Notes under the pieces: model-generated
The model's database searches: none
What the model was told of the DNA's origin: nothing
The model's input: only the letters and a program-made list of their open reading frames with translations
Origin: Macrostomum lignano
Taxonomy: Eukaryota
DNA length: 64,000 nucleotides
Direction of reading: 5' to 3'
Assembly (NCBI GenBank): GCA_002269645.1
Contig: NIVC01001109.1
Coordinates: forward strand, 1-64,000
Position numbers and translations under genes: made by a program
Shown: one piece after another, positions 20,461 to 47,100 of the stretch
How the letters are laid out: every line of letters begins with the position of its first letter
Position numbering within the stretch: position 1 is the stretch's first letter

Positions 20461-21096
20461 GGACGCTCTAACGAAACCACTAGGCTACAACCCCTCAATT
20501 TGATTTATTTGAAAAATAAAATAGATAAAAACGCCAGAAGCGATCAGTTGCATATGACTCAGCTATGTTAGTTTATATTTAGTAGTGTGAAAGCCTTAAA
20601 ATAAAAACAACACGCAGTTCCGCAGTTCGGAATCAGCACATAATTTGAGCCGATTCGTTGTAGTTATAAATATTTCGAATAAATTTAATGAAGGTCATTG
20701 CAATGCCAACTCGATCAGAAAAGCGGTCAAAGATTTGCAGGGACGTACACTGCAAACTTATGGTACAGAAACCCTGTGTTATTGAGACTTGGCATCTTGC
20801 CAATTCCTAAAAAGCAGGAAAAAGAATGCGCAGGCTCGGCATGACCAAGCATTCGAACTCTCAGGCATGTCTGAGCACGATGCTCAGAGTCGTAACCAGC
20901 TTCCAACACAGACTTCGCATCCAAGTGACTCTCTTCCAAAGTATTTGGCCATGCTTTCCCAGGCAGGGAAGCCATTTGAGCATATGGAATCGAGGTTAGC
21001 TGCACGTGTTTCGTGTCTTTACTTGACTTAGCTGCAGGGACACAGCGGGAAGGCGCGGGCGCCCATTCCGCTAGTCCCTGAACGGCCGACGCGTCG

Positions 21097-24000
21097 CTAT
21101 GGACGGAGGGTTGGCGCCGCCCAGGGAGGTCCCCCAGTGTCGCCAGCAGCTATAGTGCTCTCTGGAAAGGAGAGTTCAGCCCTGCGGGTGGCCCGAAGGT
21201 AGCGCATGAGCTGGTTAAAGTTTTCGGGTTTGCACGCTTCAGTAATAGATGTGTGTGGCCCGAGGTAAGTGAGTCTGGCCCGCGTGAAGGCGGGACAGAT
21301 GCTGACGAAATGCTCAGCGGTTTCGTCACCTGAGTTGCAGAAACTACAGGTGGCGTTGGTGGCGTTGCCCTGAAGGTACTGGTGCCTGGCGAAGCAGCCG
21401 TGACCAGAGAGGGCCATGGTGGCAGCCCGGATGTCTCTGCGCGAGAGGCGCAAGAGGAGCTTCCGGAGCTGGTGAGAGGGCTGAGGGACAGCGCCTCTAG
21501 ATTGCCTGCAGTTCGTGCGGTTCGCCCAAGTCGAGCGGTGCTGAGTCCTGATCCACGCTTTGATGCGCGAGTTGATGACACAGCCAGGAATCGGGACAAG
21601 AGGTTCGGGGCCGAGAGAGGAGCCGGAGGCACCAACTTTTGCAAGGGTGTCAGCCAACTCATTTCCTCGGATCCCCACATGCCCCGGAACCCACTTAAGG
21701 GTAATTTTGTTGGCGGAACCCAACACGTTGAGGAGTTTGATACAGTCAAGGACTGTAGCAGAGTTGGTGCTGCAGCCACTGATGGCGTGCAAGGCAGCTT
21801 GGCTGTCCGAATGGAAAATGATGTTCTTACCAGTAACGCCAGTGGCGAGAAGCTCTGCAGTGCAGGAGCTGATGGCCAGAACTTCATTTTGGAAAACACT
21901 GGAGTTGACCCCAGTGTATTGAGCGTGGGTAGCGATGACCCTCCCGTTCAGAAAGATTCCAACACCAAAGCCGGTGTTGGCTGACTGCTTAGAACCATCG
22001 GTGTAGCAATGAAGCTCACCAAGGTTCCATTGGTCATTGATGTTATCGCGCGAGTCGATAGCTACGGAGTAGCGTTGTCTCAGGTTGAGCGTTGAGGCAA
22101 TGCCATCGGTGAAGACGCGATTGGCCTGACACTCGTTGAGAAAGTTGAGGCACAGGTCGCTATGCGGGACAAGGTTCCGCTTAGCAGGTGCTCTCATGTA
22201 AATGAATTTGACGCCGGCATCAATTAGACGCCGCGTCGTTCTAGCCGCCTCACCCCTGACGAAGAGGTCAAGAGGCGGTAGATTAAGGAAGGCCCCCATG
22301 CCAGCAAAGGGCGTGGACCTGGTGGCGTTGCAGATGAGCCTACACGCTCTGCCTTGGATCGTGTTGAGCAGATCTGCATGGCTTTTGACCTGGGTAGCGC
22401 TAACCCAGACAACAGAGGCGTACGTAATGGCAGGTCTAACTACGGAAGTATAGATCCACCAAAGCCGCTTTGGGGATAGACCCCAAGAAGTGCCAAGTGC
22501 TCGTCGGAGCTGGGCCAGGATGGCTGAGGCACGCTTGGCTTTTGCTTTCACGTGGAAGGACCAGTTGAGCCGGTGGTCAAGTGTGACCCCGAGACATCTG
22601 GTCTGGTGCGCGAAGGCAATATCTCTGCCGTAGAGCTGCAGAGGACGTATGTTCCAGCGTAGTCTGCTGGTAAACATAATGGCAACGGTTTTGGGCTCAG
22701 AGAGTTCCAGACCTTTGTCATTGGCCCAGGATTCTGCTTTGCGGATAAAGCTCTGCATCAGATCCCTGAGCGTGCTGGGAGACGGTCCTGCCACAATGGC
22801 CGTGACGTCATCAGCATACCCGACTTTGAAGACGGGGTCGGGTCGGGAGTCACTCAGAAGAGCGTCCATGACCAGGTTCCAGAGCGTCGGGGTGAGGACT
22901 CCGCCTTGGGGTCCACCCTTACAGACTCTGGTGGAGGCAGTTTGCCCAAGAAGTTGGCAGTGACCGTACGGTTGGAGATCATGTACATGATCCACCGTAT
23001 GAGGGTAGCATGAGCTTTGCGATTTTGAAGGGCCCTCTGAAACGCTTCAAAGATAACGTTGTCGAAGGCGCCAACAATGTCAAGAAAGAGAGCCAGGGCG
23101 TAACCGTCACCCAGTACCGCCCGTTCAATCTTCTCGACAATCGCATGCAGGGCGCTGTCAGTCGACCTCCCGGTACGGAAGGCGTGCTGATTATTGCTGA
23201 GGGGCATCGCTGTCAGCTCGCAGGACAGCAGCCGCCAGAGAATAAGCCTCTCAGTGAGCTTAAGCATTGCTGACGTTAAGCTAATAGGCCGGAAGGCCTT
23301 GACGCTTTGGTAGTCACCCTTCCCAGGTTTGGGAATAAAGACTACCCGAGCTTCAGTCCAGCATTTGGGAACGTATCCCAGCTGGATAGAGGCCCGCATA
23401 AGATTGCGGGTGAGTCTCAGGAACGAGGGTATCTTGGCTGCTTCACGAAGAAGAACAGGGTAGATACCATCAGGTCCAGGAGATTTGAAGGGTTTGAAGG
23501 TTCTGACCGCACGAGCGATTAGGTCTTCAGTGACAATGCCCGCCGCTAGGGTGGCTCCATCCATCGAATGGTTGGGCTCCGGTCTAGCAGTAGGTACCCT
23601 CGGGAAGAATGTGCTGAGCATATGCTGAAGCACTTCTTCAGGGTCTTTAGTAAGAGAGCCATCATCTTTTTTGATCACGGCTAATTTAGACATTTTGTCC
23701 ATTGTAAGGGCCTTGACAAGCCTAGAAGTAGGTCTGTCTTGATCCAATTCATTGCAGAATTGGCGCCACTTACATTCCTTGGCCTTGCGCACTTCAGATT
23801 TGAAATTGCGGGACGCTTGCCGGAAAAGCTCCATGTCCTCCGGGTTTCCGGTCTTCATGGCACGGCGATGAAGGCTTTTGGCCTTCCGCCTGAGTTTCCC
23901 CAGCTCCGGGTTCCACCACGGCGCCGAGGTCTTGCCTTTGTAGGCGCGAGCAGGACAAGCCGCTACGTAGGCTGCAATAATGCAACCTGTCAGCGTCTCA

Positions 24001-24851
24001 GCCATTGACAGGTATCAATCCTCAATCCTCGCAGGATCCACATCCTCGCAGGTCTCAATCGGACATAAGTCCGTGAGTTCCTGCAGGTGCAGATCAAGGG
24101 CAGCCTTGTAGGCCGCCCAATCAGTGTTGCGGATATTGCGCCTCCAAGTGATCGGAGACTGGGTTTTAGTGTCCGCGATGTTAAAGGCGATAAAGCAGTG
24201 GTCAGACAGGGAGGGCTCCTCAGACCAGACTCTCCACTCCTCAACTCTGTCAAAGAGTCTTGAGGTTACGAGTGTGGCGTCGAGGACCTCGGTCCATCTG
24301 CCATTATTAAAGGTAGGAGTGCTGCCGCGGTTGCAGAGCATGAGGTTTGTGTTAGAGATGAGGGCCAGAAGCTCCTCTCCTCTAGTATTGGTGTCTTTGC
24401 TGCCCCATTGCTTGTGGTCGCCCCCTAAGCACAGCTCAGCGTTCTGGGACTCGCAGTACTGCGCGAGGCGCAGTAAACTCTCAGGAGCAGGGTCTCTGTC
24501 GCCTGGGATATAAACCGAGGCAACAAGATGCGTACGCGGAGAGAAATGATTAGATTGGATGACGCAAAGGTCTCCATCAGAGAGATCAGTCCTCAGCCAA
24601 ACCTGGAGATGGCTAGCAGCGAGGACAGCCGCTCTGGGGCGGCTGTTCCCCGGGCCACACACATAAAAATCAGAGTAGCCAGAGGGAATGTTGGGCAACT
24701 TACTGTTGCGCATCCAGGGTTCCTGGATCAGGATGAGGCCTGGCCTGTACAGCTCAGCAATCTTCATCAGATTTACTGACGCAGATACGCAATGCTGTAA
24801 ATTTATTTGCAGACAGAATGTCGCTCCTTTGGCAGCGTGGAGCTTAGTCAT
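21097..24851 (-). pseudogene. LINE ORF2: APE endonuclease (24015-24851), RT (22854-24005 and 21097-22995), RNase H, C-terminal CCHC; split by two frameshifts
   Basis: LQINLQH, IQEPW, SDHCFI (APE); FRPISLTS, FLDIVGAFDN, PQGGVLTPTLWNL, YADD (RT); YTDGSK, HSDSQAAL, WVPGHVGIRGNELAD (RNase H); CSFC...ETAEHFVSIC. Confidence 0.9.
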
Positions 24852-26274
24852 ACTGTATTAAATGCAATGTCTGGCTAGAGCCCCAGGGCCATCGAGGAGA
24901 CTTGGACAACAGATCGTCCTCGTCCCAGACCGCTGGGGCTTGACTGGGAGATGGGAGTTGGTCGACGTCCATGGCCTCCTCACCCCCACCGGCCCCCCCA
25001 GCAGAGTCCTCAGGCTCCGATGACAGGATGGAGGAAGCTTCCTCATCTGCATCTTTACCTTCAGACCCCGCCAGGGTGGCCGAGGAGAGCTCGGATTCCG
25101 AAGACCCGGCCTCGTCCTCAACTCCTTCTCCGACTGGCAGGTTTGGTTCCCGGGGCTTGGCCGGAGCTGTTACCGCGGTCGCCGAACTGCTGCTAGCAGA
25201 GGGGCGAGACGCAGCTTTGGCTTTGGGATCGGCTTGCGCCTTTCCTTGGGCCTTAGACTGCGCCCCGCTCTTGCCGGAGATGCCGGGGTTGGCAGTAGCC
25301 TTCCCTTTGGGAGGCTTTCCTCGGCGCATCTTGAGCTTGAGGGCACCCAGCTGGAAAGAGGATCCATTAGGGTACCGACTCGCCCAAGTGCTGGAAAGGC
25401 CGAGGACAATTGAGTTGCCCGTCTCCCCCCTGCGGACTTTGCGGTGATACACCAGTCCACTAGCAGGGAGGTCGGGGTTCAGACGCAGTAGGACCCGGCG
25501 GATAACGTCTGGTCCAGCTGCGGTGCTCTTAGCAGGGACGAAAACCACATAGGGTATCGTCTTTGGACGCTGGCCCTCGCGAAGAAAAAGAGCTCCGCCA
25601 AGGTCAGCATCCAAGGAGACCGTCGGTAGCCGCTGGAGCAGCTGCCGAGCGTCCTCCTCGCTGCTAGGAGCAATAAGAACGAATGTGCTTCGCAGCACCA
25701 TCCGCTCAATGCCGATGGAGATTCCCTCCTCGACAGTCAGCTCAATCAGATAGGAGTCAACAGCACTCCACACTTTTTGAAGCTGATCAGTGGTCCAGTC
25801 CTGGTCGCGACCTTGGATGATCACTCCCGGGATTTTGGCCTTGGCCTTCGCCGCAAAGGTAGCTCCCGAAGGAACCTCCTTGTTCGCAGTGGCCATTTGT
25901 TGCACCGTGGTTTCGGCCTCAGCAGCCGCGGCAGCATCTCCAAAGAGCGCCGCCGCTGAACTACTGGAGCTTCCACCGGCCGGCCCGCCTGGTTGCCTTG
26001 GGACTCCAGTCGCTTCAGCATCTATGGTGGACGCCGCCGCTTTGGCCCCCGCAGCTCCCTTCTTGGCCTGCCTTTTGGCGCGTTGTTTAGCGCGTTTGCG
26101 CTCAAGCCGAGCCCGCTGAGCTTCATCGGATCTGCCAGATTTGGCCGGTCCTTTAGGCTCAGAGCTCGCGGTTCCCTTAGATCCACCAGCAGAGCTGGCA
26201 GGTCTTTGGGTATTTTGAGTTTGGTAGCTCTGGTCGGATCTGCCAGCAGAGCCAGCCGGTCCTTCCTTTGCCAC
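24844..26274 (-). CDS. LINE ORF1 (gag-like, low-complexity flanks, ~55-bp internal repeats at the N-terminus)
   Basis: 476-aa ORF immediately upstream of and overlapping ORF2; start codon uncertain. Confidence 0.75.
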   Translation of the reverse strand: MAKEGPAGSAGRSDQSYQTQNTQRPASSAGGSKGTASSEPKGPAKSGRSDEAQRARLERKRAKQRAKRQAKKGAAGAKAAASTIDAEATGVPRQPGGPAGGSSSSSAAALFGDAAAAAEAETTVQQMATANKEVPSGATFAAKAKAKIPGVIIQGRDQDWTTDQLQKVWSAVDSYLIELTVEEGISIGIERMVLRSTFVLIAPSSEEDARQLLQRLPTVSLDADLGGALFLREGQRPKTIPYVVFVPAKSTAAGPDVIRRVLLRLNPDLPASGLVYHRKVRRGETGNSIVLGLSSTWASRYPNGSSFQLGALKLKMRRGKPPKGKATANPGISGKSGAQSKAQGKAQADPKAKAASRPSASSSSATAVTAPAKPREPNLPVGEGVEDEAGSSESELSSATLAGSEGKDADEEASSILSSEPEDSAGGAGGGEEAMDVDQLPSPSQAPAVWDEDDLLSKSPRWPWGSSQTLHLIQYD

Positions 26275-26935
26275 AGTTGAATCAGTCGGTTGGGATCTGC
26301 CAGCAGGGCCGGCCGGTCCTTCGGACTAAGGTTGGGGTTTAGAAGGGTCCCCGTCCCTAGGAAAAGCTTGTTTATCCATAGTCGGCTCGAAGGCCAAGAT
26401 AAAGGTTGGTGGGCTACCCTCAAAGGGGCGCGGTACCCACCCGGCCGCTCCACCTGACCGGGCAGTATGCCAATAGAACCCTCAAGGCTGGCCCGACACC
26501 AGGAGGGGGACCGCTTGCGACCGGACTACTCCCCGGCCTTCCAGCCCATCGGCACGGTCAACACCTTAGGCATTAGAGAGTACGTTGAGCAGTACCACGG
26601 CCTGCAGGTTGGCGAGCCAGACCCGCATACCCAAATTCGGCCGAAGCCACTGGATAGGGTCGCCAGCGCCGGAGCCCAGTCTGTCCAGCAGCCCTAGAGA
26701 CTGCCTTGAACACACGCGGGGACGAGTACCCTGGGTCGACTTGCGAGACAGCGTGGGGGGGGGGGTCTGCGGCTGCCAGAGGCAAATAGAGGGTGCAGAC
26801 CTCCCACCAGCCTTGACCTGCCAAAGATAGGGGCAGGCGTGAAGCATCGCAGACCTTAGCCCATGGGCCTAGTCTGTCTCATACTTCACTGGCATGCTGA
26901 ATACGCCTTCGCGTGCCGTGTTCCGTGTAGTCTTC

Positions 26936-29900
26936 TTCGTCTTCTTCCCTTTTATCGCCGTGAGGCATGGGTCCCGGGGCTCTCTACGTGCCGCAAATCC
27001 TCCTGTGCCTTGCCATGTTGGTCGCTGCTAACATCCGTCCGCATAAATTACACTGTCTCGCTTGCGTATGTGTTTCCGGGGTACTTCTACGTTGTTGTCT
27101 TCGGTTGCCTCCACAGGTGTTGTTAGGCTGGTGCAAGGCCTCCGGTGTCGCGCTAAATTGCTCTTTGTGATCGTTCTACCGCATCCGCCGCATACAACGG
27201 AACCAGATGTTGCCTCCTTTTCTCCACGGCATACTTTTCGGTGGTTGCGCCACGTCGCCTCTTGTCCGAATGTCTTAACCTATCGCACGTAAAAGTGACC
27301 GGCGCTGGTATGGTCATATGCATCCTTTTTGGTGAATTGTTAATCCTGCTTTGCTTTTGCAGATTTTGCCACAGTCCGCATAGTTACAGCGGTATCCGGT
27401 TAGTGTAAGTTCACCTCTCGGTGGTGGTTGTCTTCTTTCTATGGTAGTGTCGGGCGTCATGTTCCCTTGTAGTTTCTCCCATGCTTCCATGTGACTGACA
27501 CGTTGTTTAATCCAATTCCTCCATTCTTCGCGATCTAGGACCATCCTTTCAACTTCCGTCGGGTTAAGGCCTCCTTCTCTAAGCAATTTCTTCCAGTAAT
27601 TTATCGTGTTGCTCTTTTTCCTTCGGACTTTTTGTATGCCTTCAAGACCCCAGAATCATACGAGAACGGCTCGTTTCGTCTGGCGGTCGTCGGGCATTCT
27701 CAAGACATGTCCTATTTGGATCAGGTGAGCTTTTTTAATCTTGATGCATAGTGAGCTCACTTGCAGTTCTGATCTCACATCTAGCATATTCATACATGTA
27801 CCTTCGCTCTCCATTTCTCGGAGCGGCTCTATGGTCTTCGTGCTCCAGATATGTCGACCCGTTGCATTGCCTTGATTTCTGATTGGTGCCACGGGCGGAT
27901 TTTGGCGTGGAAAAGGGCCACGCTCTCGATACAAGCTTCGACAACCTTAGCCTGAGTCTTTTTGGTTAGACGGCATTTAGTGAAGCGTCTTTTGATGGTC
28001 AGATAACTTTTGGTTGCTCTTTCTATGCGGTTGCTTAGATCTGTAGTTCTTCCAGTCCAGCTTCCTAGCATTCTGATGTTACCTCCTTCCGCTGTGCCGA
28101 TATTCATTTCTTCTTCTTTATTGTCGTTAAGCCGTTCTTCGAATTCCGACATACACTTTTTGACAACCTCAAGTCCGTCTGTCAGTTCGCCGCGATTGCC
28201 TATCAGCGTCGTGTCGTCTGCGAACAAGGATGTTTGAAAGCTGTGCGTTCGCATCTCGGAATTGTATTCACTTACTCGCTGCGGTGGTAGTGCGTGTCCG
28301 GTCGAGTAGGCCCATTCGATGCCGCAAGTGAGTTGCTTTTCGTCAGCCAACTGTTTTCTCCTTTGCTCTGCTCTCCTTCTGCTGGCTTGGTGATAGATGT
28401 TGAAGAGCACGGGGGACGTAGGGCACCCTTCACGAAGTCCTCGATCTGGGTGCCATTCCTCACTCGTCCCACCTTTGCCTTGTACCTTGTAGGCCGTATA
28501 CTCATGTAGGTCTTGTAGCTTCGCAATGGTCTCCTCTGGAATGCCGTATCGTCGTAGCAGTTCCCACAGTAGTGGCTTGCAGACGCGCGAATACGCTTTC
28601 TGTAGGTCCAGGAGGATGGCGATATAATCATGTTCCAGGTTTTGATTTCCGATCTGTTTTTTTCAATGTGTCTGCGTTTTTGTCATCATATAACGCTTGC
28701 CAGTTGATATTTGCACATCTGGTCTTCTTCTTTTGGTGCTTATCTTGCTTACTTTGAGGAATGAGATGCTTGAGGATTATTGTTCTGGGGATGTGGTCGG
28801 ACAACTCATTTTTGATATTCAGTTTAGTGGCTTTGATGAGTCGTTGGCGATCCTCCGCTCCAGTTCGTACCATTTTCTGGTTCTAGGGTTGCACCACGTG
28901 CCGCGGCGTTTCGCGTTTAAATAAGAGTTCAATAGAGTCAAGTCATTGGTTATGATCCAGTTCATCAGATCCTCTCCCTGCTGATTCGTTTGTTGTAGTC
29001 CAAATAAACTTTCCACGGTGTCTCCCGTCTGCGTGTTCGTTTCTTCCGATTTGAGCATTGCAGTTCCTCCAATCACGATAGGTTTGTTCTTCAAATCGAT
29101 GTTGATGAGTCTTTCGAGATCAAATCTCAGTATATTTAGTTCTTCTTGGTAGGTTGCGCTGCCCTGTACCGGGCAGTAGGTGCTGATGATGCCAATTCCA
29201 TAGATGTCAATCATGACTGCGCGTTCCGTGATTTTCGCTTTACGGCCTGAGTCGTTCCAGAGTTTAAAGATAAATTCGTTCATTAGGATGCCTGTGCGCT
29301 TTGAGTGTACTAGGTGCACTTGTCTTTTCCCATGAGCGTAGACTTTACTGCCTTTAAATCTCGCGGATAATTCGCTAATGCACGTAATCAACCAGTTAGT
29401 TGCAATACAGTGTTGCATTACAGTGTTGCAATACAATACTATCTCGCCGAAACGTCCTTCCGAGATGTTGGCCCTTCTAACGTTCCACGTTGAAATGCGG
29501 CAGCTCTCCTGCAATGCTTTCTGCTTCCTTTCGATTATCTTTTGCTCTCTTCTGCGCTGTCTGCGTTCATTTCTCCTGGCTTGCCTCTGTTTTTTCTAGT
29601 GCTGTGTCTTAGGTCCTGGGTTCTTTTCAATTGTTGTTAGCTTACACTCAATTTTCGATTCCTGTCTTCTCTCACTTTTTGTTTTTTTCCTAGGTTTTTC
29701 TTAAATTGCTTAAATTTCTCCTCGCTTTCTCTTAATCGCTTCTTTGCGTCCTCTCTCGACTTCCTTCTCTCCCCGGGTTGCTTAGCCTGAGTTTTAGCGA
29801 CGTCAGAGTCTGCTACTTTCTGCCGTCGTTGACAAAAAGGGCCGGTTGGCCCGGGGGCGGCTTGACCGCTTTTCCCGATCTCCGGACTCCTTTCCCTCGG

Positions 29901-29961
29901 GTCCATCTTCTCAGGAGTACTCCCGTCCGCTTTCCGCCACAGAAGGCTGGACCACATTGGA
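26936..29961 (-). mobile_element. RTE-like LINE 'A': K/R-rich N-terminus, partial APE, partial RT, several C-terminal zinc fingers; internally deleted and frameshifted
   Basis: ISTWNVRR (APE); LLDLQKAYSRV, GLREGCPTSPVLFNIY, LFADDTTL (RT); GHVLRMPDDRQTK (RTE-type C-terminus); CGKICKSKAGLTIH, CGGCGRTITKSNLARHRRPC, CNLCGRMLAATNMARHRRIC; GAAGAC-like tail abutting CCGTGTAGTCTTC. Confidence 0.8.
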
Positions 29962-29978
29962 AAGCCCGTGTAGTCTTC

Positions 29979-31181
29979 TTGTCTTGTCTTGTATGGCCAG
30001 TCGACCTCCTAAGAGGCATGCCACTCATTGGTTTTCTGCGGTGCAAACTCTCCGGTGTCTTGCTAAATTTGTCTTCGAGATGCTCTTGTTGCAGCTTGGG
30101 CAGGTGGTCCTCGCTCTTCTCGGTGCTTCGGTGGGTTCAGGCCTGTTGGTATCCTGTTTGTAAGTCGTTGTACTGCGCACAGGTGCGTATGTGTCTCGCC
30201 ATGTTGCTGGCGCTTCTGGGCTGGAGACAGTACGGGCATGTCCCTTTCGGGGCGCCTTTGCAGGTCTTCAGGTGGTTCGTTTCGCTGGCTTTGTTGTTTA
30301 GGGTGTCTCCGCATCTTGGGCACTTCTTCTCCTCTTCTCTTTGTTCTCGGTGCTTCCTGGTGTTGTGGATTTTCAGACCCGTGTGAGTCTTGAACTCTCT
30401 GTTGCAGATGGTGCAGTATCTGTCCTCTGTTTGGCGTCCTGTCTGGTCCCTTGGCATGACCGTGTTCTTGTTCGTCGCTTTCATCTCTTCCCATTTTGTT
30501 ATGTGTTCCAGTCTTTCTTTGAGTACCGCTTTCCAAGATCCTCGGTCTCTCGCGATCTGCTCGATGTCGTCCGGTTCGTATCCTGCTTTTCTTATTACTC
30601 TTATTACTTTCTTAGTCCTTGGTCCATCCATTGTTGTCTCCATTGGCGTCCTAGGAGTATTGCTGCTCTCTTCGAATGGATTATGACCACGCTGTTTTTC
30701 CCTTCCCCTATCCATATCATTCCGGGTTGTTCCGCTGTTATTTCTGACATCAGTACTATGTTCCAGTGCTTCTTGTTGCAGTAAGCCGTCACTTCTCGTA
30801 GTTTCCTTCGGTTGTTTTCTCTTAGCGACATCTTCTGTAGGTTCCAGGTCACTATTTGTGTCTTCTCAGTCGGTTCTTTCCTGAGGTTTTCGGTTCTGAT
30901 CTTTTCCGTCGTGTTCTTTTCCTTTCGCGATCTTGTTTTCTCTTTTCTGGTGTCCATTCTTTCTTTCCTCGCCTGCCTTTCTTCTTTGTCGTTGTCTTTG
31001 CCGTCTCCTTTTGGGCCAGATCTTCGGGCCCCGGGTTCCGCTCCACGTCACCGCTGTTTTCCAATGAGTATTTGATGTTAGAGTGCATCAGCCGCTGCAG
31101 ATTTTTACATCTGTTTTGGCCTCCTTTGCATTTGCTGCCCCCTTTATGTTTCCGCACAGCATGCAGCTGTGCAGCATGAGC
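29979..31181 (-). mobile_element. RTE-like LINE 'B': 2A motif, APE N-terminus fused directly to C-terminal zinc fingers (rest of APE and all RT deleted near 30600)
   Basis: SGDVERNPGP; IVTWNLQK...HSKRAAILL (APE, homologous to A); CTICNREFKTHTGLKIH, CPRCGDTL...HLKTC, CPYCLQPRSASNMARHIRTC; (CAAGA)n tail; flanked by AAGCCCGTGTAGTCTTC at 29962-29978 and 31182-31198. Confidence 0.8.
31026..31052 (-). other. 2A-like ribosome-skipping (StopGo) motif GDVERNPGP
   Basis: Exact D(V/I)ExNPGP consensus in ORF 30852-31157, upstream of the APE domain. Confidence 0.85.
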
Positions 31182-32849
31182 AAGCCCGTGTAGTCTTCAA
31201 TTGCTACACGTCAGCTACCGTGTAGTCTTCAATTTCCAAAAAGTGAGCATCGTCCTCATCGTATGCTTGGTCATGCTGAGTCTATGCATTTATTTTCCTA
31301 CTTTTCGCCGAAGGTTCGCCATAGCTTAGCAACTTTTCATAGCCTTTGCGAAAAGCGTCAGCCGACACGCTTGCCCAGGGACTTCCTAGCTGATTGATAA
31401 AGCGCTATTGGACCTCCACTCCAATTCACGGCGGGTTTCGTGCAGTGGAGTGCTACCATTCGGAACAAGATATCGTCCAATTCATTGGTCCACTTGGTAG
31501 AAACTATTTAATAAGCGATGGTTCCAGTGCTGCTAATCTTATTGCTGCAATATAATATAGCCAGTCACTTCAATCTTGGGGGTCCTGACGTTACGGCTTG
31601 CATGAAAATTTCATCGGAATTCGGATTGGTGCATTCTATCCCATTCGAGTTTCATGGATGGCCCAAATTGTCCCCGTAACGTGGAGATTCCATGCAGAGC
31701 ACCACCGACATCGAATTTCTAAAAAAATCAGACGTTTTAAGAGCAGATCTTTAGTAAACTTTGATGCTGTTAACTTGTGACTCAAAATATGCTTCATTAA
31801 TGTCTTTTTTAGTCCTGTAAATAAAGCTTTAATCGTTTGAACTATTCTGGTGAATCGTTCCATAGAGCATGAAAAATCAACATATCTATGTCGAGTTAAT
31901 TTAAACGCTTAGCTATGGAACTCTTTGGGCCGTTCCTATTTCGTTTTGCATGACCACTGTTTCCCATAGCACCACAAGAGCAATATTAAACTGATTTAAA
32001 CAGCGTTAAATCTCAGAGTGTATTTGAGAACGAGAGGCATTTAAACCGCAGAACAGAACGGTATTAGCGAATATAGTCTGTGGATTCAGTTGTTAAAAGT
32101 TCAACAACGCATTTTATCTTTTGTTATGTTAATGGAGGTTACCCTAGAAGTGAGACTCATTTAGCACTGATCGATTTGTCAATGTGTAAAAAGCCTTGGA
32201 CGAGAAAATGTCTATGGCTCAATCCGAAGGAGCGCTTGTCAAGACGATAGTTTTATGAGTGGTTCCTCATACCCTAGAGAATAGACAAGAGGGAAAGAGA
32301 GAAAGGGAGGAGAATGATCAATAATATCGATTACATAGTTATTACATGGGAGGAACTGGGTTGCTTTCGCCTTTTGTCGTCTTTCAATGGCCTTGTAGTC
32401 ACTGGTAGTCTCGAATAAAAATCGAGAAAATCGAGAAAAGTTTCTCTCAATAAGTTCTTTGGAGCTATGAAATTCTTTTGAAGAAAGTTCTTCGAGACCA
32501 GAAATCTCTGATTGGCAAGAATCGTTAGTGTATTATCCAAGCGTAAAATCGCGAGCCTTCTGATCTTCGCCTTCTGTAATATGGATCCGGAAATCAGAAC
32601 TGTGTATCTTTTATTTGTTATTGTTGTTACGTTATTCCTGAAATTTTTTTTATAATAACTGATTGAGTGGGATATGTAAAGCAGTTGAAGCAAATTGATA
32701 TGTAAAACTAGAAAAAATCCGAGATGATAAGGTGTGCCTACTGAAAATCAGGTCTTCTGTTTACTACGCGGACACCTTAACGTGATATAGTGTGACAGAA
32801 ACAATTAACAGAGTGAATATTAGAGTCCAAAATAACAACTAGTACTTTT

Positions 32850-38390: not shown

Positions 38391-39920
38391 CTAAATGAAA
38401 AAACTAAGTCGGACGCCATCCTTTTCCAGTACAGCGGTAGGCTTGAGGTCGTTTGGGTCGCATGATTGCCTCACGGCTGGGATAGCCTTCGGTCTTTGAT
38501 TGATGTTGCTAGCCTCTGAAGTCTCAATGACGACCATACGCTTTGAGGAGGTGGCCTCAGTCTCCGACACAGTTCCGTACAGAGCACTCGTAAGCGAATT
38601 TGAAATTTGCTGTTTCCTCTTCTCAGAAATCCTTTTCACATAGCGGTCAACTGCAGCGTCAGTGCGATGGCCTGGTAAAGTGGGAGGGGGCAAGGTACTG
38701 AACTGTTATTTAATGGGCGCAGGTGGAACACAAGCACTTAGATGATTAACATAACAGGAGACAAGTTACCTGTAACAGTCTTGATTTCTCTCACACTGTG
38801 CCCAGCTTCTGCCAAGTAAGGTTACAACACTGGCACGAACGCAGTGGTTCGTGTACTCCAACTGAAGACCTGCACGCCGCGAGATGTTCTTCATCATGTC
38901 ATTGAGCGTGTTCTTCCCCAAGACCTGCTTGGCCGAGTACCAGACATCAGAATCAGCACGAACCTTTATGGGCTTTGGAAAAAGTGCCTCCACACCAGGT
39001 GGGAATTTGGCGAGATACAGTTGCACTGCCTCAACTGGACACTTTGAGCCACCAGTACTGAACATCCTCGTATGCTTTCCGGTTGAACATTGCTGAATAC
39101 TTGCCGCAGTCAAAGTCTTCTCAGGACCCGTTTGAACCATGTCGATGCACTCTACACCTTCGTGCTCGCAGAACCGCACTGAGGATACCTTCAGGTCCCT
39201 TATCCATTCTCGACCTCGGAAGCCAAAGTGGTAGACAATGTTAAAAAACACTTCGTCTTGCAGCCGCTCCGGGTCCCTTCGGTTGAAGTACGCACTTAGC
39301 AGGGACAAGTCGGAATCGGTGATGGCCTTGAATCCTCGTTGGTCTCCAACGGTTCGCTCCCTCAACTGGCAACTCAAACGCAGGACGCACGAGTAGGTTT
39401 CATTGCTCAGGCGAAATTGCTCATTCCCAATGACGTCAGTCGCACGTGTCTCAATCATGTACCTGTGCACGCTGGCTCTGAAGCCCCGGATCGCATCCGG
39501 TGCATACGTCTTTGTCCCCACGGCAGGATTTCCTTTCAAACTTACATACCAGAGGCGCAAATAGCTGTCGACATAACGCAGTGGCATGCGCTCAATGTCC
39601 TCAGGCAGTTTCTTCTCGCGGAGGAACTTCTTAAGTCGTTCAATGTGATTCCGAGTAGTAGCCAATGTCGAAGGCGACTTTGAGGATGCCTCGGTGTCCT
39701 TAATGTTTTGAAGTTCTTTCGCATCCAAGTCTCGTAGCGAACACTCCGGATCAATAGCGGAATTCAGGAATTCTTCGATCTCCTCGTGGTCCAGGACCGG
39801 CAGCCCAGTGAATTGATCTACCGTTGATTCTGCATGCATGGACAGTCGAGATATAAACTGCAGCTCAGAATTAGCCAGGCCACTAATATCGCCTGTTGCT
39901 ATCTTACTGAAATTGATCAT
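38391..39920 (-). mobile_element. Crypton-type (DUF3504/CryptonA-like) tyrosine recombinase gene; exons 38770-39920 and 38391-38671; one 1-nt frameshift near 38815
   Basis: Catalytic set in order: HFGFRGRE (R), YTNHCVRAS (HxxR), TG|HRT (H), VDRY (Y); also CPVEAVQLY and WYSAKQVLGKNTLNDMMK. A 98-nt GT-AG intron (38672-38769) joins VTG to HRTD in phase 1. Confidence 0.85.
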
Positions 39921-41534: not shown

Positions 41535-43780
41535 TTATAATATTCCACTCTCGTCACACCGATAAAGAAATTCGCGAACAGCTTGGATGTGGCTTTCGTA
41601 GTCGGCGCTTGCGATTATGCAGTCATCCACAATGTGGCGAGTATCTTTCAAGCCCTGTAGAGCACTATCCAGTCTCCTGTTGTAATATTCTGAGATAGAG
41701 CTGATCCCGAAAGGTGCCATTCTGAACATGTATCTTCCATAAGGAGTAATACATGTTGTCAGTGGCATACTGTCCTCGTGGAGTGGTACTTGATGGTATC
41801 CTTTCAATGCATCAACAACTGTAAACCATTCTGCGTTGGATACATTGGTGCTGGTCACAACTTCCAGTGGTGTTGGTGATTGGTATCGAGGTCTCAGAAC
41901 GTATTTGTTTATCTCTCTAAAATCTACGCAAACACGAATTTGGTCAGTGCCCTTCTTCGGGGCTACGACTATTGGAGCGCACCAGGGTGTCGGCTCTGTT
42001 ATTTTGCAGATAATTTGCTGTCTTTCAAAGGCATCGAGTTCGTTTTTAAGTTTTTCATGCAGTGGCAGTGGTAACCAGCGTGGCGTCTTCACGGAAAATG
42101 GGATCGCGTCCTCTTTGAGCACAATCGAAAATTTTTCGCCCTTCATCGGCCGAATTACTCCGTCGAAGACCCTCGGGAATTCTTGGATCAAATCCAGTTC
42201 TGTGTGTTTTCTTCCGTCATTCGTCAGAACCTGAGTTATCTGGTTTATCTGACTTGGAAACTCTTTAGGGATGATTCCCAGTTTTCTACAGCTCTGCCAG
42301 GACAGCACTGGCGCGACCAAGTTCTTCAGCACATCCTTGTCGCTGCGTGCTTCCCGTTCAGCGTTATTGTGGCGGAGAAATTGCCGTTACTCTTAATGAA
42401 CTGTCCACTGGCTGATTTAGGAAATATGGCGTCATGCCTTAGTTGTGCAACCCGGATTCAGAGCTTTTTGCAATCGCATTCTCGGATTGCATCGATATTG
42501 GATCCCGTATCGGGCATCATTTCCAGCTGCTCCCCATTTATCGAGACTATTACTGTTGGGGTTGCGGGTTCCAGTGTAGCAACCAAAGTTGACATTCTCG
42601 GTGGTCGCCTTTTATCCGGATGACCAGTGCTGCGACTGGACGGGCACATGGAACCAAAATGTCCAATGCGACCGCAGTTAAAGCACTTCTTGTCCTTGGC
42701 GGGACATTCTGAGCGCTGATGTCGCCCTTTACCACAGGCAGTGCATTTCTTTGCTTCTAGACTCTTTGACCGGGCCCCACCTGGAGTTTTTCCTCGGTGT
42801 TTGCGCACTATGGACACCTGTGAAGCTGCGCAGATTTCATTTTTTTGGATCTCACAAGCTTCCTCTGATCTACATATTGTCAGCGCGTCAGCGAGAGAGA
42901 GATCTGGCTGTGCTAATAGACGCTTGATTGTCTCCGGATTTCGTACTCCTAGCACAATTTTATCCCTCAGTAGGTCGTCGGAATGCTTACAGAACTTACA
43001 TGTTCGCATCAAGTCCCTCAATTGCATGACATAGTCGTTAAAATTTTCTCCGTCATTTTGTTGCCGTTTCCAGAACCTGTTCCTCTCTACGATGATATTA
43101 ACCTGTCCGAGTACGTGATCTCTGATGGAATTCATAACGATCTTTGGGTCCTTGGATTGTTGATCCGTCAGAGGTAGATTCTTATACTTTGAGAAGGTAG
43201 CAGATGTAAATGCGTTCAACATGCAAGCTCGTCGGGCTGCCATTTTCTTCTGAGTTACGTGGATGCTGTCTGATTCCTCGTGCTGGATGTTAACTGCATC
43301 GAAGTATGCCTCAAGAGTCGCTCTCCAAGCGTCGAAATCATCGATCGTATCCACTGATAGGTCTAGTCGAGGGATGTGCAAACCAGGCAGAGATAGTTTC
43401 AGCTCAGCTTGTCCAGTTGGTGAGATATTTGCTGCTGATGCTGCTGCTGATGCTGCTGCTGATGCTGCTGCTGATGCTGCTGCTGATCGTTCCGACTTTT
43501 ATGGCTTCTGCCTTGAAGGCGATGCCGACGTAGAGCGCTGCTGCTTTGGGGGCATCTTGTGGTTTCTTTGCCAGAAGCTTTAGCACGCGGTTTCAGTGCC
43601 TGTTTGCGATGCCATGTTATATGCTTTGGTATAATGTAACTTGGGCTGCTCTGATGGCGAGCCAAGGAGCTTAAAACAATATATTTAATCGCCCTGCCTC
43701 TTAGCACGTAGGCGGTGGAGGTCAGGGCCCTAGACATGGATATACTAGTAAGAGTCCATCCACATCAATAACGGGCAACA
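41535..43780 (-). mobile_element. 3'-truncated Ty3/gypsy LTR retrotransposon: 166-bp 5' LTR (43615-43780), gag with two CCHC knuckles, protease, partial RT
   Basis: LTR TGTTG...TAACA followed by TGG; CTACGKGRHQRSEC, CFNCGRIGHFGSMC, MPDTGSN; VDALKGYHQV, RMAPFGI, IVDD; stops before RNase H and integrase. Confidence 0.85.
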
Positions 43781-44132: not shown

Positions 44133-47100
44133 TGTTTGGGAGGTAGATTATTAACTTATTGATTTTCTTTCCATTGCATGATTTAATGTACTGCTTTATT
44201 CAGTTCGCTATGTACGCTGGTCTAGCCCAGGCCCATTTCACCCACCCCCACCGCTGGCTGATATTCTGGCTGACTGCAAATAAATATATCATCGAGAGGG
44301 CTTGCGAGCCCTGTGTACGGTTTACGTTTTTCGTTTTGTTAGCGTCTCGCTTGAGCCTCAGCTCCAAAATAGTTTGGCGGACCATCGGTCTTTTCATTTC
44401 TACAGTACATTTTGGTAGCAGAGCGTGGTTGGACAAGCCTAACTTACCACTGACGTGGCAAGCAATAGAAGCCTACTGTGAAACGAAGGACCAGGATGGA
44501 TAGTGACGACGCCAATGAGCAACAGCAGCAGGACGCCCAAGACGATGTCGGCGCGCTGCGTTTAGAGAAGCTGCGCTTCGAGAAATCCCGAAAAAAGGCA
44601 GCGTTCACTCGTTGCAAGAACAAGCTGTCTTGGCTGCTACAGACGCGCGCCTCTGACGACGAAGTGCAAGCTGCCTGCGACGCTCTGTCTGACCTTCAGG
44701 ACCTGGTCAGCGCCATCCAGGAAGAACTGCACCAAGGCTACGCCGACGCCAAGGACAACGAGAGGCGACAGCGCCTACTAGAAGAGATGGAGGAGACTGA
44801 GCGCGACTACCAAACTGCCATTCAGCGCGTCGAAAGTTCCAGAAACTGGGGATTGCAGCGCGCCCAAGAAGCCCCTCCTGTCGCGAGTTCAAGCGGTGAG
44901 AACGCTGCGGGTGACCAAGAAGAAGCAGCTGGTGAGTTAGACAAACTTTCTGGCAGTGCTGCGTCCAGCAAAGGATCCAACCCGAAGGAGCTTTCAAAGG
45001 ATTTGTGGAAGATGCTGAAGCGTGTTGAAATCCCAACGTTTAGTGGAGAAAAGCAGAAGTATGAAAACTGGAAGGCAGCCTTTGTTGCGTGCATCGACAG
45101 CGCCCCTGCAACACCAGAATTCAAGTTGCTGCAGCTTAGGCAGTACCTTAGCAGTGAAGCTTTGAAGGTTATAGAACATCTAGGACACTCCGCTGCTGCA
45201 TATGAGGCTGCAAAAGAGAGACTAGAGAGAGAATTTGGTGGACAGCGTAGGCAACTTGCTCTGCACTTGGAAGAGCTGGACAGCTTCCCGATCGTGCGAA
45301 ATGGAAACGCCAAGGATCTGAAAAGCTTTGCTAATCTACTGGATGTGGCTGTCGTTAACCTTGAGGATGCGGGTAAAGAGGCAGAGCTTCAAGATGGGAT
45401 GTTGTATGTGAAGCTGCAGAAAAAGTTGCCTGAGCAGATGGTTACCAGCTACCGGAGGTGGATCTTTGAGCAGCGGAGGCGGGAGAGTGTTAGAAATCTG
45501 AGAGTTTGGGTGCTGCAAGAAGCAGAGTTTCAGACTGAAGCGTCAGAGATTGTGCAGGGCGTTGCCACCATGCAGCAGGAGCGTCAAAAGCGAGAGCAGC
45601 GACCAAAGACTTTCGTTACTACGGACAGTGACAAGAAGGTACAGCATTGTTTGTCAAGGTGATCACGAGCTGTGGTCCTGCAGTGAGTTCAAGGAGCTTC
45701 CGGTGGAAAAACGCTGGGACGCGACGCAGAGCTCGAAGTGTTGTTTCCGGTGCTTGGGCCAAGGACATCTTGGCAGCCAATGTCGGCGCGGTCGTCGGTG
45801 CGGCATCAACAGCTGCACAAAGTTTCATCATCGCCTGCTTCATGCAGAAAAAGTGTTGGCCAAGTCTGGTGAAGCGAAGCAGACTGCATCCAAGGACGCT
45901 AAATCCGCTTCCAGTTCAGGAAAGACTGGACCGGTGACGCTTCTGTCAGCTGGTGAAACGGCAATCTCGTTACGAACGGTGCCTGTAGTCTTACGGAACG
46001 GGTCCCGGAAACTGAAGGTGAACGCCTTGCTCGACGATGCCAGTACCAGGAGCTACGTCAACATCGGGATAGCAGAAGCGCTTGGAGTGCATGGAGCGCT
46101 CGAAAAGGTGAAAGTCGGAGTCATCAATGGCCAAACAGAGACCTTCATGACAGCCCCAGTCTGCTTTAGCTTGGAAATTCTGGATGGTCAGACCAGCTCA
46201 ATGATCGTCGCCTTCACCGCCGATCACGTGACCGGGTCCCTCAAAGGCGTCGACTGGCACGAAGAAGCGCAGCAGTGGCCTCATCTGAGAAATGTGCCGT
46301 TTCCGAAGCTGTGTGAGCCTGCAGTAGTGGACTTGCTGATTGGTGCTGATCACCCGGATCTTCACGTGTCCCTCAAGGAAATCGTCGGACAGCCGCTGGA
46401 GCCAAAGGCGCGCCTGACTCCCCTGGGTTGGACGTGCATCGGTCGCACAGAGCAGGACAATTCTGAGATGCAGAACGCCCATTTTGCTGCCACTTTCTTC
46501 AGCTGCGATTCCGAATCTGGTCAGGTGGCTAAGATCCTGCGGCAGTTTTGGGAGATCGAGAACGTCTCAGAAGGTGCCAATCGAAGTCCGCTGACCGCCG
46601 ATGAAGAGAGAGCCGTCCAGCAAGCCAAGTCGTCGCTGAAGTACATGAAGGGCCGTTACTAGATCGGGATTCCATGGAAAAAGGATCGGCTGGCTCCAGC
46701 AGGCACTTTCTCAATGGCCTTCAAGCGACTAAAGAACACCGAACAGCGGCTGATTAAGGATGTGCACGTCTGCAAGCAGTATCAGGAGATCCTTGAAAAG
46801 TATGAACAGCAAGGTTATATCCGAAAAGTGTCGCAAGCTGAGACTGAAGGCCGCTGTTTCCTGCCGCACTTCCCAGTGCTGCGGCCAGACAAGGCTACAA
46901 CAAAAGTGCGGATAGTCTTTGATGCATCGGCTGCCAGATTGAACGACCAGATCCTCCAGGGCCCAAAACTGCAGAGGGATTTGGTTGACGTGCTGCTTCG
47001 GTTCCGCCGACACCCGATTGCGATCGCATGCGACGTAGCGGAAATGTATCTCCAGATCGAGATGGACCCGAAGGACAGGCCGCTGCACAGTTTCCTTTGG

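What the first reader, a model, noticed from the sequence alone, without database searches (positions are those of the whole stretch)
26923..31230. Sequence-specific RTE-like retrotransposons stacked at a 13-bp target
Seen: CCGTGTAGTCTTC occurs four times (26923, 29966, 31186, 31218), three exactly at element junctions. Two clearly diverged family members lie head-to-tail, each with its 3' tail joined at the same base of the motif, and both 5' ends begin GCTT. Established: target specificity is known in R1, R2, Tx1 and a few other clades, usually for rDNA, snRNA, tRNA or telomeric repeats, and is not typical of RTE. I do not recognise this target as such a gene. Inference: a site-specific APE-type family with a novel target, where the C-terminal zinc-finger array may read the site. 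An alternative is priming by microhomology between the AAGAC tails and the target.
Basis: partly seen in the sequence, partly recalled or inferred. Interest (0 to 1): 0.8.

Follow-up and report, generated by a model that had tools for sequence, protein, structure and literature searches.

The report
Two retrotransposons stacked at one target site
Two different dead copies of one retrotransposon family inserted at exactly the same staggered cut, duplicating the same 13 bases each time, which fits a family that inserts into sequences resembling its own repeat tail and trims its RNA with a built-in ribozyme.

Summary
CCGTGTAGTCTTC occurs four times exactly, against none expected. On the minus strand it reads GAAGACTACACGG and flanks two head-to-tail non-LTR elements: B (31185→29979) and A (29965→26936).

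The 13-mer is a target-site duplication, not an element end. Relatives from other genomes have the same 5' end (GCTTnnnnATG) next to unrelated flanks, and one has a clean 13-bp duplication.

- **The GCTT start** is stem P1 of an HDV-like self-cleaving ribozyme, supported by compensatory base changes in nine sequences.
- **Family layout** is ribozyme, 2A peptide, endonuclease, reverse transcriptase and four zinc fingers, without RNase H. That resembles L1Tc/Ingi or Vingi at least as much as RTE.
- **Relatives** from at least six subfamilies sit in (GAT)n-type repeats and stack head-to-tail, often mixing subfamilies.

Both RNA tails here end in GAAGAC, the first six bases of the target. Tail-to-target pairing therefore fits better than zinc fingers reading 13 bases; the finger helices are the same across members with different targets.

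A third, unrelated element (C) abuts the same site, which lies inside a strong inverted repeat.

Whether the 13-mer is a genome-wide target could not be tested, because no other copies were reachable.

The parts
31218..31230 (-). 13-mer copy 1 (GAAGACTACACGG), preceded by AATT and not adjacent to any element. It is an unoccupied duplicate of the target.
31199..31217 (-). 19-nt spacer tagctgacgtgtagcaatt. Its reverse complement AATTG-CTACACG-T-CAGCTA is a collapsed inverted copy of the reconstructed empty site. Origin unexplained.
   Evidence: read; empty site reconstructed
31186..31198 (-). 13-mer copy 2, the 5' target-site duplication of element B
29979..31185 (-). Element B, 1207 bp, with intact 5' and 3' ends and an internal deletion from the N-terminal part of APE to the C-terminal region. 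The 5' end GCTTGCTCATG has no canonical ribozyme fold. The tail is (AAGAC)2AA, running into GAAGAC.
31026..31052 (-). Canonical 2A motif GDVERNPGP in B
   Evidence: motif definition from PMC3708506
30043..30415 (-). Four zinc fingers of B. Coordinates: 30350-30415 (C2H2), 30260-30322, 30179-30238 and 30043-30102 (C2HC with N-[ML]-A-R-H helices).
29966..29978 (-). 13-mer copy 3, shared as the 3' duplication of B and the 5' duplication of A
26936..29965 (-). Element A, 3030 bp. It contains the ribozyme, a 2A-like motif, APE, a partial RT lacking N-terminal motifs, and zinc fingers, with several frameshifts and stops. The tail is GGAAGAAGACGAA, running into GAAGAC.
29900..29965 (-). HDV-like ribozyme fold of A: P1 GCTTTCC/GGAAAGC, P2 GGTCCA/TGGACC, P3 GCC/GGC, P1.1 GG. 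J4/2 reads GAGAAGA where relatives have GACAAAA, so the presumed catalytic C is a G (a dead copy).
   Evidence: the C-to-G effect is from PMC6326823
29611..29631 (-). 2A-like motif IEKNPGP in A
28819..29514 (-). APE-type endonuclease region of A. It is homologous to the APE region of relatives; Pfam does not detect it on this fragment alone.
27695..28631 (-). Reverse-transcriptase region of A, with motifs LLDLQKAY (28591-28614), LFADDTT (28207-28227) and GHVLRM (27695-27712)
26993..27192 (-). The last two zinc fingers of A: CGGCGRTITKSNLARHRRPC and CNLCGRMLAATNMARHRRIC
26923..26935 (-). 13-mer copy 4, the 3' target-site duplication of A
21015..26916 (-). Element C, an unrelated non-LTR retrotransposon with ORF1, APE, RT and RNase H. 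Its tail is AAGTCAAGTAAAGAC. It is flanked by ACGGAACACG (26917-26926) and ACGAAACACG (21005-21014), a likely 10-bp duplication that overlaps the 13-mer by 4 nt.
31244..31305 (.). Left arm of the inverted repeat that encloses the target site. It includes the GAN tract GATGAGGACGATG at 31248-31260.
20810..20886 (.). Right arm of the same inverted repeat

Best explanation
A and B are two internally deleted, dead copies from two diverged subfamilies of one single-ORF, APE-type non-LTR retrotransposon family.

Full-length members have these parts, in order:
- an HDV-like self-cleaving ribozyme
- a 2A peptide
- APE (endonuclease)
- RT (reverse transcriptase)
- four zinc fingers
- a short 3' UTR ending in a GAA/GAC-type simple-repeat tail

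Each copy integrated independently by target-primed reverse transcription at the same pair of staggered nicks. One nick is on the bottom strand between AATT and GAAGAC. The other is on the top strand 13 nt downstream. Each event therefore duplicated GAAGACTACACGG.

**Shown:**
- the 13-mer is a target-site duplication
- a 13-bp duplication occurs elsewhere in the family
- the 5' GCTT is P1 of the ribozyme fold
- relatives insert into GAN/(GAT)n tracts and stack head-to-tail

**Inferred:**
- The site was chosen because its first six bases, GAAGAC, equal the last six bases of both RNAs. The nicked bottom strand (...GTCTTC-3') can pair with the RNA tail and prime cDNA synthesis.
- The endonuclease and/or the conserved C-terminal fingers may favour GAN-repeat-like DNA.
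- The fingers may instead act as nucleic-acid chaperones for this annealing, as in L1Tc.
- Stacked copies are co-transcribed, and the ribozyme cuts out unit-length RNA with a precise 5' end.
For: **The 13-mer is target DNA.**
- There are four exact copies against none expected.
- The conserved 5' end GCT[TC]nnnnATG of relatives abuts unrelated flanks.
- L033 has a clean 13-bp duplication, GAGGGTGATGATG. L004b has about 11-13 bp.

**Ribozyme.**
- A strict descriptor gave 12 hits in 389 kb scanned. Eight of them fall exactly at element 5' ends, including window position 29965.
- Nine sequences parse with compensatory changes in P1, P2 and P3.

**Tails.** A, B, L004b and L006 end in GAAGAC, and the target starts with GAAGAC.

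**Family target preference.**
- Flanks hold 3-14 GAT per 30-45 nt against a background of 0.6 per 30 nt.
- This holds in L001, L004a/b, L005, L007, L008, L009, L010, L017, L021, L033 and L034, which represent at least six subfamilies.

**Head-to-tail stacks,** several of them mixing subfamilies: L004, L009, L021 and L033.

**Only A and B** of this family are in the 64 kb window, and both are at this one site.

**Literature.**
- TSD start correlates with the 3' microsatellite in RTE-related elements (PMC6007223).
- L1Tc C-terminal fingers act as annealing chaperones. L1Tc occurs in tandem copies with the same TSD and shows relative site specificity (PMC5814959).
Against: - GAAGAC occurs 40 times in the window, which is no more than chance gives, and is otherwise unoccupied. 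Six bases of homology cannot by themselves explain reuse of one site.
- A and B are not in a (GAT)n microsatellite. The nearest GAN tract, GATGAGGACGATG, lies 17 nt from the unused 13-mer copy and 49 nt from the used one.
- The unused upstream copy, AATT plus the 13-mer, was not hit.
- Some relatives (L012 and L015) have different flanks that are not GAT-rich.
- No biochemical step was tested.
Confidence: 0.55

Rival explanations
1. True sequence specificity. The A/B lineage recognises the 13-17-bp site AATTGAAGACTACACGG, possibly as part of a multicopy foldback repeat. This would work like Tx1L in Tx1D or R1/R2 in rDNA, with recognition by the endonuclease and/or the fingers.
For: - Two diverged subfamilies have identical junctions at both ends.
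- The family as a whole is target-selective.
- The site lies inside a roughly 330-bp inverted-repeat unit that could be a repeated element.
- The C-terminal fingers resemble the DNA-binding fingers of R2 and CTCF.
Against: - No other copy of the 13-mer or of the inverted-repeat unit exists in 64 kb.
- No RNA gene lies at the site.
- The finger helices are the same as in relatives with a different target.
- The upstream AATT + 13-mer copy is unoccupied.
- An unrelated element, C, also landed here.
- Nothing was found in the metagenome scan.
Confidence: 0.2
2. A structure-dependent local hot spot. The site lies just inside a long inverted repeat that can extrude a hairpin or cruciform. It would be nicked repeatedly by any APE-type endonuclease, so several unrelated elements and one abortive event accumulated there.
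For: - The reconstructed empty site folds at -73.3 kcal/mol against -38.7 ± 3.9 for shuffles, z about -9.
- Element C, of a different clade with RNase H, has a likely 10-bp duplication overlapping the 13-mer by 4 nt.
- A 32-bp micro-duplication with an inverted filler sits at the same place.
Against: - A and B share both nick positions to the base, which a loosely defined fragile site does not predict.
- The reconstruction of the empty site rests on my assignment of C's duplication.
- Relatives show sequence-directed, not structure-directed, targeting.
Confidence: 0.2
3. The 13-mer belongs to the elements' own termini, and the array arose by recombination or tandem duplication.
For: The motif recurs at every junction.
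Against: - Relatives share the 5' end GCTT... and the 3' UTR/tail but not the 13-mer.
- The ribozyme fold starts at the G after the 13-mer.
- A and B are far too diverged to be an in-situ duplication while the 13-mers stay identical.
- One copy of the 13-mer stands alone (31218).
Confidence: 0.03

Closest known systems
L1Tc / ingi (Ingi clade) of trypanosomes, and the related Vingi clade
   Same: - HDV-like ribozyme in the first ~77 nt
- 2A peptide at the N-terminus of a single ORF
- APE, then RT, then C-terminal C2H2-type fingers
- a duplication of about 12 bp
- tandem copies flanked by the same duplication
- 'relative site specificity'
- internally deleted derivatives that keep both ends, such as NARTc and RIME

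Sources: PMC5814959, PMC3708506, PMC5786205.
   Different: - No RNase H domain is detectable here. From memory, Vingi also lacks RNase H, but I could not check this in the held papers.
- There are four fingers rather than two.
- The tail is a simple repeat (GAA/GAC) rather than poly(A).
- The hosts are metazoan-like or marine.
- The phylogenetic position was not tested.
RTE clade (RTE-1, Bov-B, lepidopteran RTEs)
   Same: - single ORF with APE and RT
- very short 3' UTR ending in simple repeats (PMC2887409)
- the first base of the duplication correlates with the tail repeat (PMC6007223)
- HDV-like ribozymes reported at 5' ends (PMC3774820; PMC6765202)
- internally deleted derivatives that keep both ends
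   Different: - 2A was reported in the Rex1, Crack, L2, L2A, CR1 and Ingi clades; the paper does not mention RTE.
- As far as I recall (not tested here), RTE proteins have no C-terminal finger array.
- No RT tree was made.
Microsatellite-targeting non-LTR elements: Waldo (ACAY), Mino (AC), Kibi (TC), Koshi (TTC), Dong (TAA)
   Same: Insertion into simple repeats with precise junctions. Dong also carries a 5' HDV-like ribozyme (PMC3812793; PMC3774820).
   Different: - Those elements belong to the R1, Tx1 and R4 clades.
- (GAT)n is not in that 2013 list.
- A and B themselves sit at a non-repeat 13-mer, not in a microsatellite.
R2 and its SIDEs
   Same: - the 5' ribozyme defines the RNA 5' end from a co-transcript
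- fingers contact the target
- short internally deleted copies keep only the ribozyme and the 3' end (PMC3414825; PMC6765202)
- P0004's C-terminal fingers hit R2's N-terminal fingers
   Different: R2 uses a restriction-like endonuclease, its fingers are N-terminal, and its target is 28S rDNA.

Membership tests
Site-specific non-LTR retrotransposon (R1/R2/Tx1 sense) | Most or all genomic copies lie in the same target sequence | not testable with these tools
   Only two copies were available. The exact-protein look-up, the homologue search and the metagenome DNA scan found no others.
Site-specific non-LTR retrotransposon (R1/R2/Tx1 sense) | Independent insertions share 5' and 3' junctions to the base | tested here: met
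   A and B share an identical 13-bp duplication at both ends.
Site-specific non-LTR retrotransposon (R1/R2/Tx1 sense) | The target is a multicopy sequence (RNA gene, repeat or another transposon) | tested here: inconclusive
   There is no Rfam or tRNA hit, and no other copy of the 13-mer or of the surrounding inverted-repeat unit in 64 kb. The rest of the genome was not seen.
RTE clade | The RT domain groups with RTE in a phylogeny | not tested
   No labelled reference sequences were available.
RTE clade | Single ORF with APE and RT, and a short 3' UTR ending in a simple repeat | tested here: met
   Relatives encode one ORF of about 1250 aa. The 3' UTRs are about 60-80 nt and end in (GAA)n, (GATAC)n or (AAGTC)n.
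RTE clade | No further domains after RT | tested here: not met
   Four C-terminal fingers are conserved across the family. The family also has an N-terminal 2A, which the 2A survey reports for other clades and does not mention for RTE. That RTE proteins end soon after RT is from my own knowledge.
Ingi/L1Tc clade | 5' HDV-like ribozyme, N-terminal 2A, single ORF and C-terminal C2H2 fingers | tested here: met
   compared with PMC5814959.
Ingi/L1Tc clade | RNase H domain after RT | tested here: not met
   Pfam finds no RNase_H in P0004, while the same search finds it in element C.
Ingi/L1Tc clade | The RT domain groups with Ingi or Vingi in a phylogeny | not tested
   No reference sequences were at hand.
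HDV-like self-cleaving ribozyme | Nested double pseudoknot (P1, P1.1, P2, P3, P4) starting at the cleavage-site G | tested here: met
   A and eight relatives parse with compensatory changes. The descriptor is specific: 8 of 12 hits in 389 kb fall at element 5' ends. B does not parse. The Rfam models do not detect it.
HDV-like self-cleaving ribozyme | Catalytic C in J4/2 | tested here: inconclusive
   Relatives have (G)ACAAA. Copy A has G at that place, so the family meets the feature but this copy does not.
HDV-like self-cleaving ribozyme | Self-cleavage activity | not testable with these tools
   This needs an in vitro transcription and cleavage assay.
Microsatellite-targeting non-LTR elements | Copies are embedded in one kind of simple repeat | tested here: not met
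   This holds for many relatives, which sit in (GAT)n. It does not hold for A and B, whose target is GAAGACTACACGG.

The most novel reading that the evidence does not exclude
An Ingi/Vingi-like, ribozyme-bearing APE-type lineage has moved from GAN-microsatellite targeting to strict recognition of a unique 13-17-bp site, AATTGAAGACTACACGG, carried by a multicopy foldback repeat. At least two diverged subfamilies would share that target, and the conserved finger pair plus tail pairing would together set the nick to the base.
Probability: 0.2. Interest if true: 0.65.

Novelty: new variant of a known kind. Interest (0 to 1): 0.5.

Why it matters
Target choice by APE-type retrotransposons is poorly understood outside R1, TRAS/SART and Tx1.

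This family combines features that have been described separately:
- a 5' HDV-like ribozyme
- a 2A peptide
- a C-terminal finger array
- a simple-repeat tail

It also shows clear target selectivity, with (GAT)n-type tracts in relatives and a tail-matching 13-mer here, and it stacks different subfamilies head-to-tail. That gives a tractable system for separating three possible sources of specificity: endonuclease preference, finger-DNA or finger-RNA contacts, and RNA-tail pairing.

It would also link the trypanosome L1Tc layout to elements of marine animals.

For annotation, it explains why these elements have exact 5' ends and why internally deleted copies with both ends survive.

Tried and rejected
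**Searches for other copies.**
- Exact-protein look-up of B's intact 192-aa ORF: not on record.
- Homologue search with the same ORF: nothing.
- Homologue search with a stitched A protein: best hits were only about 46% identical.
- Metagenome DNA scan for GAAGACTACACGGGCTTNNNNATG: 0 hits.
- Result: a genome-wide junction logo was impossible.

**RNA gene at the target.** Rfam at gathering and at permissive thresholds, and ARAGORN, found nothing.

**Rfam on the ribozymes.** Not detected in the window or in relatives. I used my own pseudoknot descriptor and per-sequence parsing instead.

**MAFFT alignments of the ribozymes.** Searches put P2 one column out of register in one sequence, so I did not build a covariance model or use the pair-counting tool.

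**Clade assignment.**
- No labelled references were available. The supplement of Odon 2013 is not held.
- The gastropod LINE FASTA files carry no clade names.
- The Ruminski 2011 and Kojima 2011 papers are not held.
- The PDB search gave only weak L1 ORF2p and zinc-finger hits.
- Cluster look-up gave no names or organisms.

**Hypotheses rejected.**
- The 13-mer as an element terminus.
- In-situ duplication of one element.
- A single dimeric insertion. That would still need the same 13-mer at donor and target.

**Idea dropped.** I considered a model in which the GAN tract positions the nick at a fixed distance. I did not adopt it because the used 13-mer copy is farther from the tract than the unused one.


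Full report
**1. The observation.** CCGTGTAGTCTTC is present exactly four times, at 26923, 29966, 31186 and 31218. No dinucleotide-preserving shuffle of the window gave a single exact match, and no further copy appears even with two mismatches. The elements lie on the minus strand. In that orientation the locus reads:
- ggaaatt[GAAGACTACACGG]tagctgacgtgtagcaatt[GAAGACTACACGG]|GCTTGCTCATG-B-ccatac(aagac)2aa
- [GAAGACTACACGG]|GCTTTCCAATG-A-gggaagaagacgaa
- [GAAGACTACACGG]aacacggcacg

**2. What A and B are.**
- Three-frame translation shows that A (29965→26936, 3030 bp) carries a 2A-like IEKNPGP, an APE-type endonuclease region, a reverse transcriptase lacking its N-terminal motifs, a GHVLRM motif and C-terminal zinc fingers. 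It has several frameshifts and stops.
- B (31185→29979, 1207 bp) has a canonical 2A (GDVERNPGP) and the first ~85 residues of the endonuclease. It then jumps to the C-terminal region with four fingers.
- The two share no nucleotide similarity detectable by blastn.
- A tblastn of all relatives against the window finds only these two copies of the family.
- Both are therefore dead, internally deleted copies with intact ends.
- According to PMC5786205, this 'bipartite' kind of derivative has been reported only for RTE, Ingi, Vingi and R2.

**3. The family.**
- A stitched A protein finds about 35 relatives at no more than 46-47% identity. Most come from marine metagenome assemblies and include full-length proteins of about 1250 aa on contigs of about 4.3 kb.
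- The common layout is an N-terminal 2A (xHPNPGP, xEPNPGP), APE, RT, and four fingers: one C2H2 and three C2HC.
- Pfam finds no RNase H in them, although the same search finds one in the neighbouring element C.
- A PDB sequence search matches the finger region to the N-terminal fingers of R2 and to CTCF.

**4. The 13-mer is target DNA, duplicated at insertion.**
- Loci carrying relatives show a conserved 5' end: GCTTGGCTATGG, GCTTGGGGTATGG, GCTCGGTCATGA, GCTTTCAATCTGG or GCTTGTGTTTGG.
- They also share a 3' UTR motif, ATGCC-N5-6-GGCGAYAAAA, followed by a simple-repeat tail.
- None carries the 13-mer.
- L033 has a clean 13-bp duplication, GAGGGTGATGATG. L004b has 11-13 bp.
- So 13 bp is the family's usual stagger.
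- A and B are much too diverged to be an in-situ duplication while the 13-mers remain identical. They are therefore two independent events at the same two nicks.

**5. Why both start with GCTT.**
- The first 65-90 nt fold as an HDV-like double-pseudoknot ribozyme whose P1 begins at the G of GCTT.
- A strict descriptor required P1 of 7 bp, P3 abutting the 3' strand of P1, GG for P1.1, P2 of at least 5 bp and a C in J4/2. It gave 12 hits in 389 kb scanned on both strands. Eight were exactly at element 5' ends, including window 29965.
- Per-sequence parsing of nine sequences shows compensatory changes:

| Stem | Variants seen |
|---|---|
| P1 | GCTTTCC/GGAAAGC, GCTTGGC/GCCAAGT, GCTCGG/CCGAGC, GCTTGT/ACAAGT |
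| P2 | GGTCCA/TGGACC, GGTCTTC/GAAGACC, TGACTTC/GAAGTCG, TTGGATT/AATCCAA |

- Rfam does not detect these ribozymes.
- Copy A has G where relatives have the J4/2 C (GAGAAGA against GACAAAA). The equivalent C-to-G change abolishes activity in HDV-type ribozymes (PMC6326823).
- B no longer gives a canonical fold.
- 5' ribozymes that cut the element out of a co-transcript are known for R2, R4/Dong, L1Tc, baggins and RTE (PMC3774820; PMC6765202).

**6. Target choice in the family.**
- In the junction table and two further genomic copies, elements of at least six subfamilies are embedded in (GAT)n-type tracts. These are L001, L004a/b, L005, L007, L008, L009, L010, L017, L021, L033 and L034.
- Their flanks hold 3-14 GAT per 30-45 nt against a background of 0.6 per 30 nt.
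- Tails are (GAA)n, often ending in GAAGAC, or (GATAC)n.
- Head-to-tail stacks are common and often mix subfamilies (L004, L009, L021, L033). The next element's ribozyme starts 13-37 bp after the previous tail.
- Other members show no GAT-rich flank (L006, L016, L002/3, L012/15). L012 and L015 are the same element with different upstream flanks.
- The B-A stack in the window is therefore typical family behaviour, except that the target is not a microsatellite.

**7. Mechanism proposed.**
- Both RNAs end in GAAGAC: A in (GAAGAAGAC)2 and B in (AAGAC)2AAGAAGAC.
- The target begins with GAAGAC, as shown by the two copies preceded by AATT rather than by a tail.
- After a bottom-strand nick between AATT and GAAGAC, the 3' end ...GTCTTC can pair with the RNA tail and prime cDNA synthesis. 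The top strand is cut 13 nt downstream.
It agrees with the correlation between the start of the duplication and the tail repeat in RTE-related elements (PMC6007223).
- It cannot be the whole story. GAAGAC occurs 40 times in the window at chance frequency and is otherwise unoccupied.

**8. The zinc fingers.**
- The last two fingers have the helix S-[KA]-[TS]-N-[MIL]-A-R-H in all 54 fingers examined. These include A, B and the (GAT)n-targeting relatives (consensus).
- They therefore cannot encode a subfamily-specific 13-bp target.
- By the canonical C2H2 code (established knowledge), Asn at +3 and Arg at +6 would favour G-A-N triplets. That fits both the tails and the targets (GAT GAT, GAA GAC). 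This is inference only, since these are C2HC fingers.
- In L1Tc the C-terminal fingers bind nucleic acid without sequence preference and act as annealing chaperones (PMC5814959). That role would also fit the pairing model.

**9. Which clade.**
- The single ORF, the short 3' UTR with a simple-repeat tail, the 5' ribozyme and the bipartite derivatives all fit RTE.
- They fit Ingi/Vingi equally well. The 2A peptide and the C-terminal fingers are L1Tc/Ingi features (PMC3708506; PMC5814959).
- The 2A survey reports the Rex1, Crack, L2, L2A, CR1 and Ingi clades and does not mention RTE.
- The missing RNase H argues against Ingi proper. From memory, it fits Vingi.
- I could not obtain labelled reference sequences, so no RT tree was made and the clade stays open.

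**10. The surroundings.**
- Directly downstream lies element C (21015-26916, minus strand), with ORF1, APE, RT and RNase H. Its tail is AAGTCAAGTAAAGAC.
- C is flanked by ACGGAACACG (26917-26926) and ACGAAACACG (21005-21014). This is a likely 10-bp duplication that overlaps the 13-mer by 4 nt.
- Three non-LTR insertions thus fall within 19 bp.
- Removing them gives a 339-nt empty site that folds as a long inverted repeat: DNA minimum free energy -73.3 against -38.7 ± 3.9 kcal/mol for shuffles, z about -9. The arms are at 20810-20886 and 31244-31305.
- The fourth 13-mer belongs to a 32-bp micro-duplication. Its 19-nt filler is the reverse complement of a collapsed copy of the empty site (AATTG-CTACACG-T-CAGCTA). 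I cannot explain this. It may be a repair scar of another break at the same place.
- These facts keep a structure-dependent hot spot alive as a rival or as a contributing factor.

**11. What could not be done.**
- No close relative of A or B, and no other copy of the 13-mer, could be reached.
- The key test, junctions of all genomic copies, therefore remains open.
- The source organism is unknown. BEL/Pao, DUF3504 and C-type lectin-like ORFs together with the marine relatives suggest a marine animal.

**12. Verdict.**
- The finding is real and more than chance. It is a shared target-site duplication produced by two independent insertions of a target-selective family.
- The specific claims of RTE membership, a novel 13-bp target and reading by the fingers are not established.
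- The evidence favours targeting guided by the tail and by GAN-repeat-like DNA, with the 5' end defined by a ribozyme.
- I rate it a new variant of a known kind, with moderate interest.

Noticed in passing
window 21015-26916 (-): Element C is a separate non-LTR retrotransposon with ORF1, APE, RT and RNase H, and largely open reading frames. Its likely 10-bp duplication (26917-26926 and 21005-21014) overlaps the A/B 13-mer by 4 nt, and its tail also ends in AAGAC.
   Followed up: partly
window 20810-20886 and 31244-31305: Inverted-repeat arms enclose the B-A-C nest. The reconstructed 339-nt empty site folds far better than shuffles (z about -9). It could be a foldback or MITE-like unit, and there is no other copy in the window.
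   Followed up: partly
window 31186-31234: AATTGAAGACTACACGG is directly duplicated, separated by a 15-nt filler that is an inverted, collapsed copy of the target region. It may be a repair scar; the origin is unexplained.
   Followed up: partly
window 31248-31260 (-): The GAN tract GATGAGGACGATG lies 17 nt upstream of the first 13-mer copy. It recalls the (GAT)n targets of relatives.
   Followed up: no
L002 and L003: Two contigs from different metagenome assemblies carry the identical element with the same >200-nt upstream flank but different 3' flanks. This could mean a shared target or an assembly chimera.
   Followed up: no
L004 4179 and 8238; L021 89; L033 5388; L009 3027: Head-to-tail stacks of family members inside GAT-rich tracts, several mixing different subfamilies. 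The downstream element of L033 and of L009 has a ribozyme-like start, GCTAGCCCATGG or GCTATCTCATGG.
   Followed up: partly
window 44478-49585 (+): A BEL/Pao-type LTR retrotransposon with DUF1759, Peptidase_A17, RT, integrase and DUF5641 domains.
   Followed up: no
window 41535-43381 (-): Another retroelement fragment, with RT and a CCHC zinc knuckle.
   Followed up: no
window 38766-39920 (-), 9763-11160 (+), 54395-55132 (-): ORFs with weak matches to DUF3504, BTB/NPH3 and C-type lectin respectively. These may be host or transposon-derived genes.
   Followed up: no
window, many sites (for example 2471-3818, 7986-9122, 12787-13496, 62456-63185): More than 25 minisatellite arrays with periods of 15-31 bp, and long (AGAT)n and (GTTG)n tracts. 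This is a very repeat-rich region.
   Followed up: no
window 29399-29435: A 13-nt tandem repeat (GTTGCAATACAGT, 2.8 copies) inside the endonuclease region of A.
   Followed up: no
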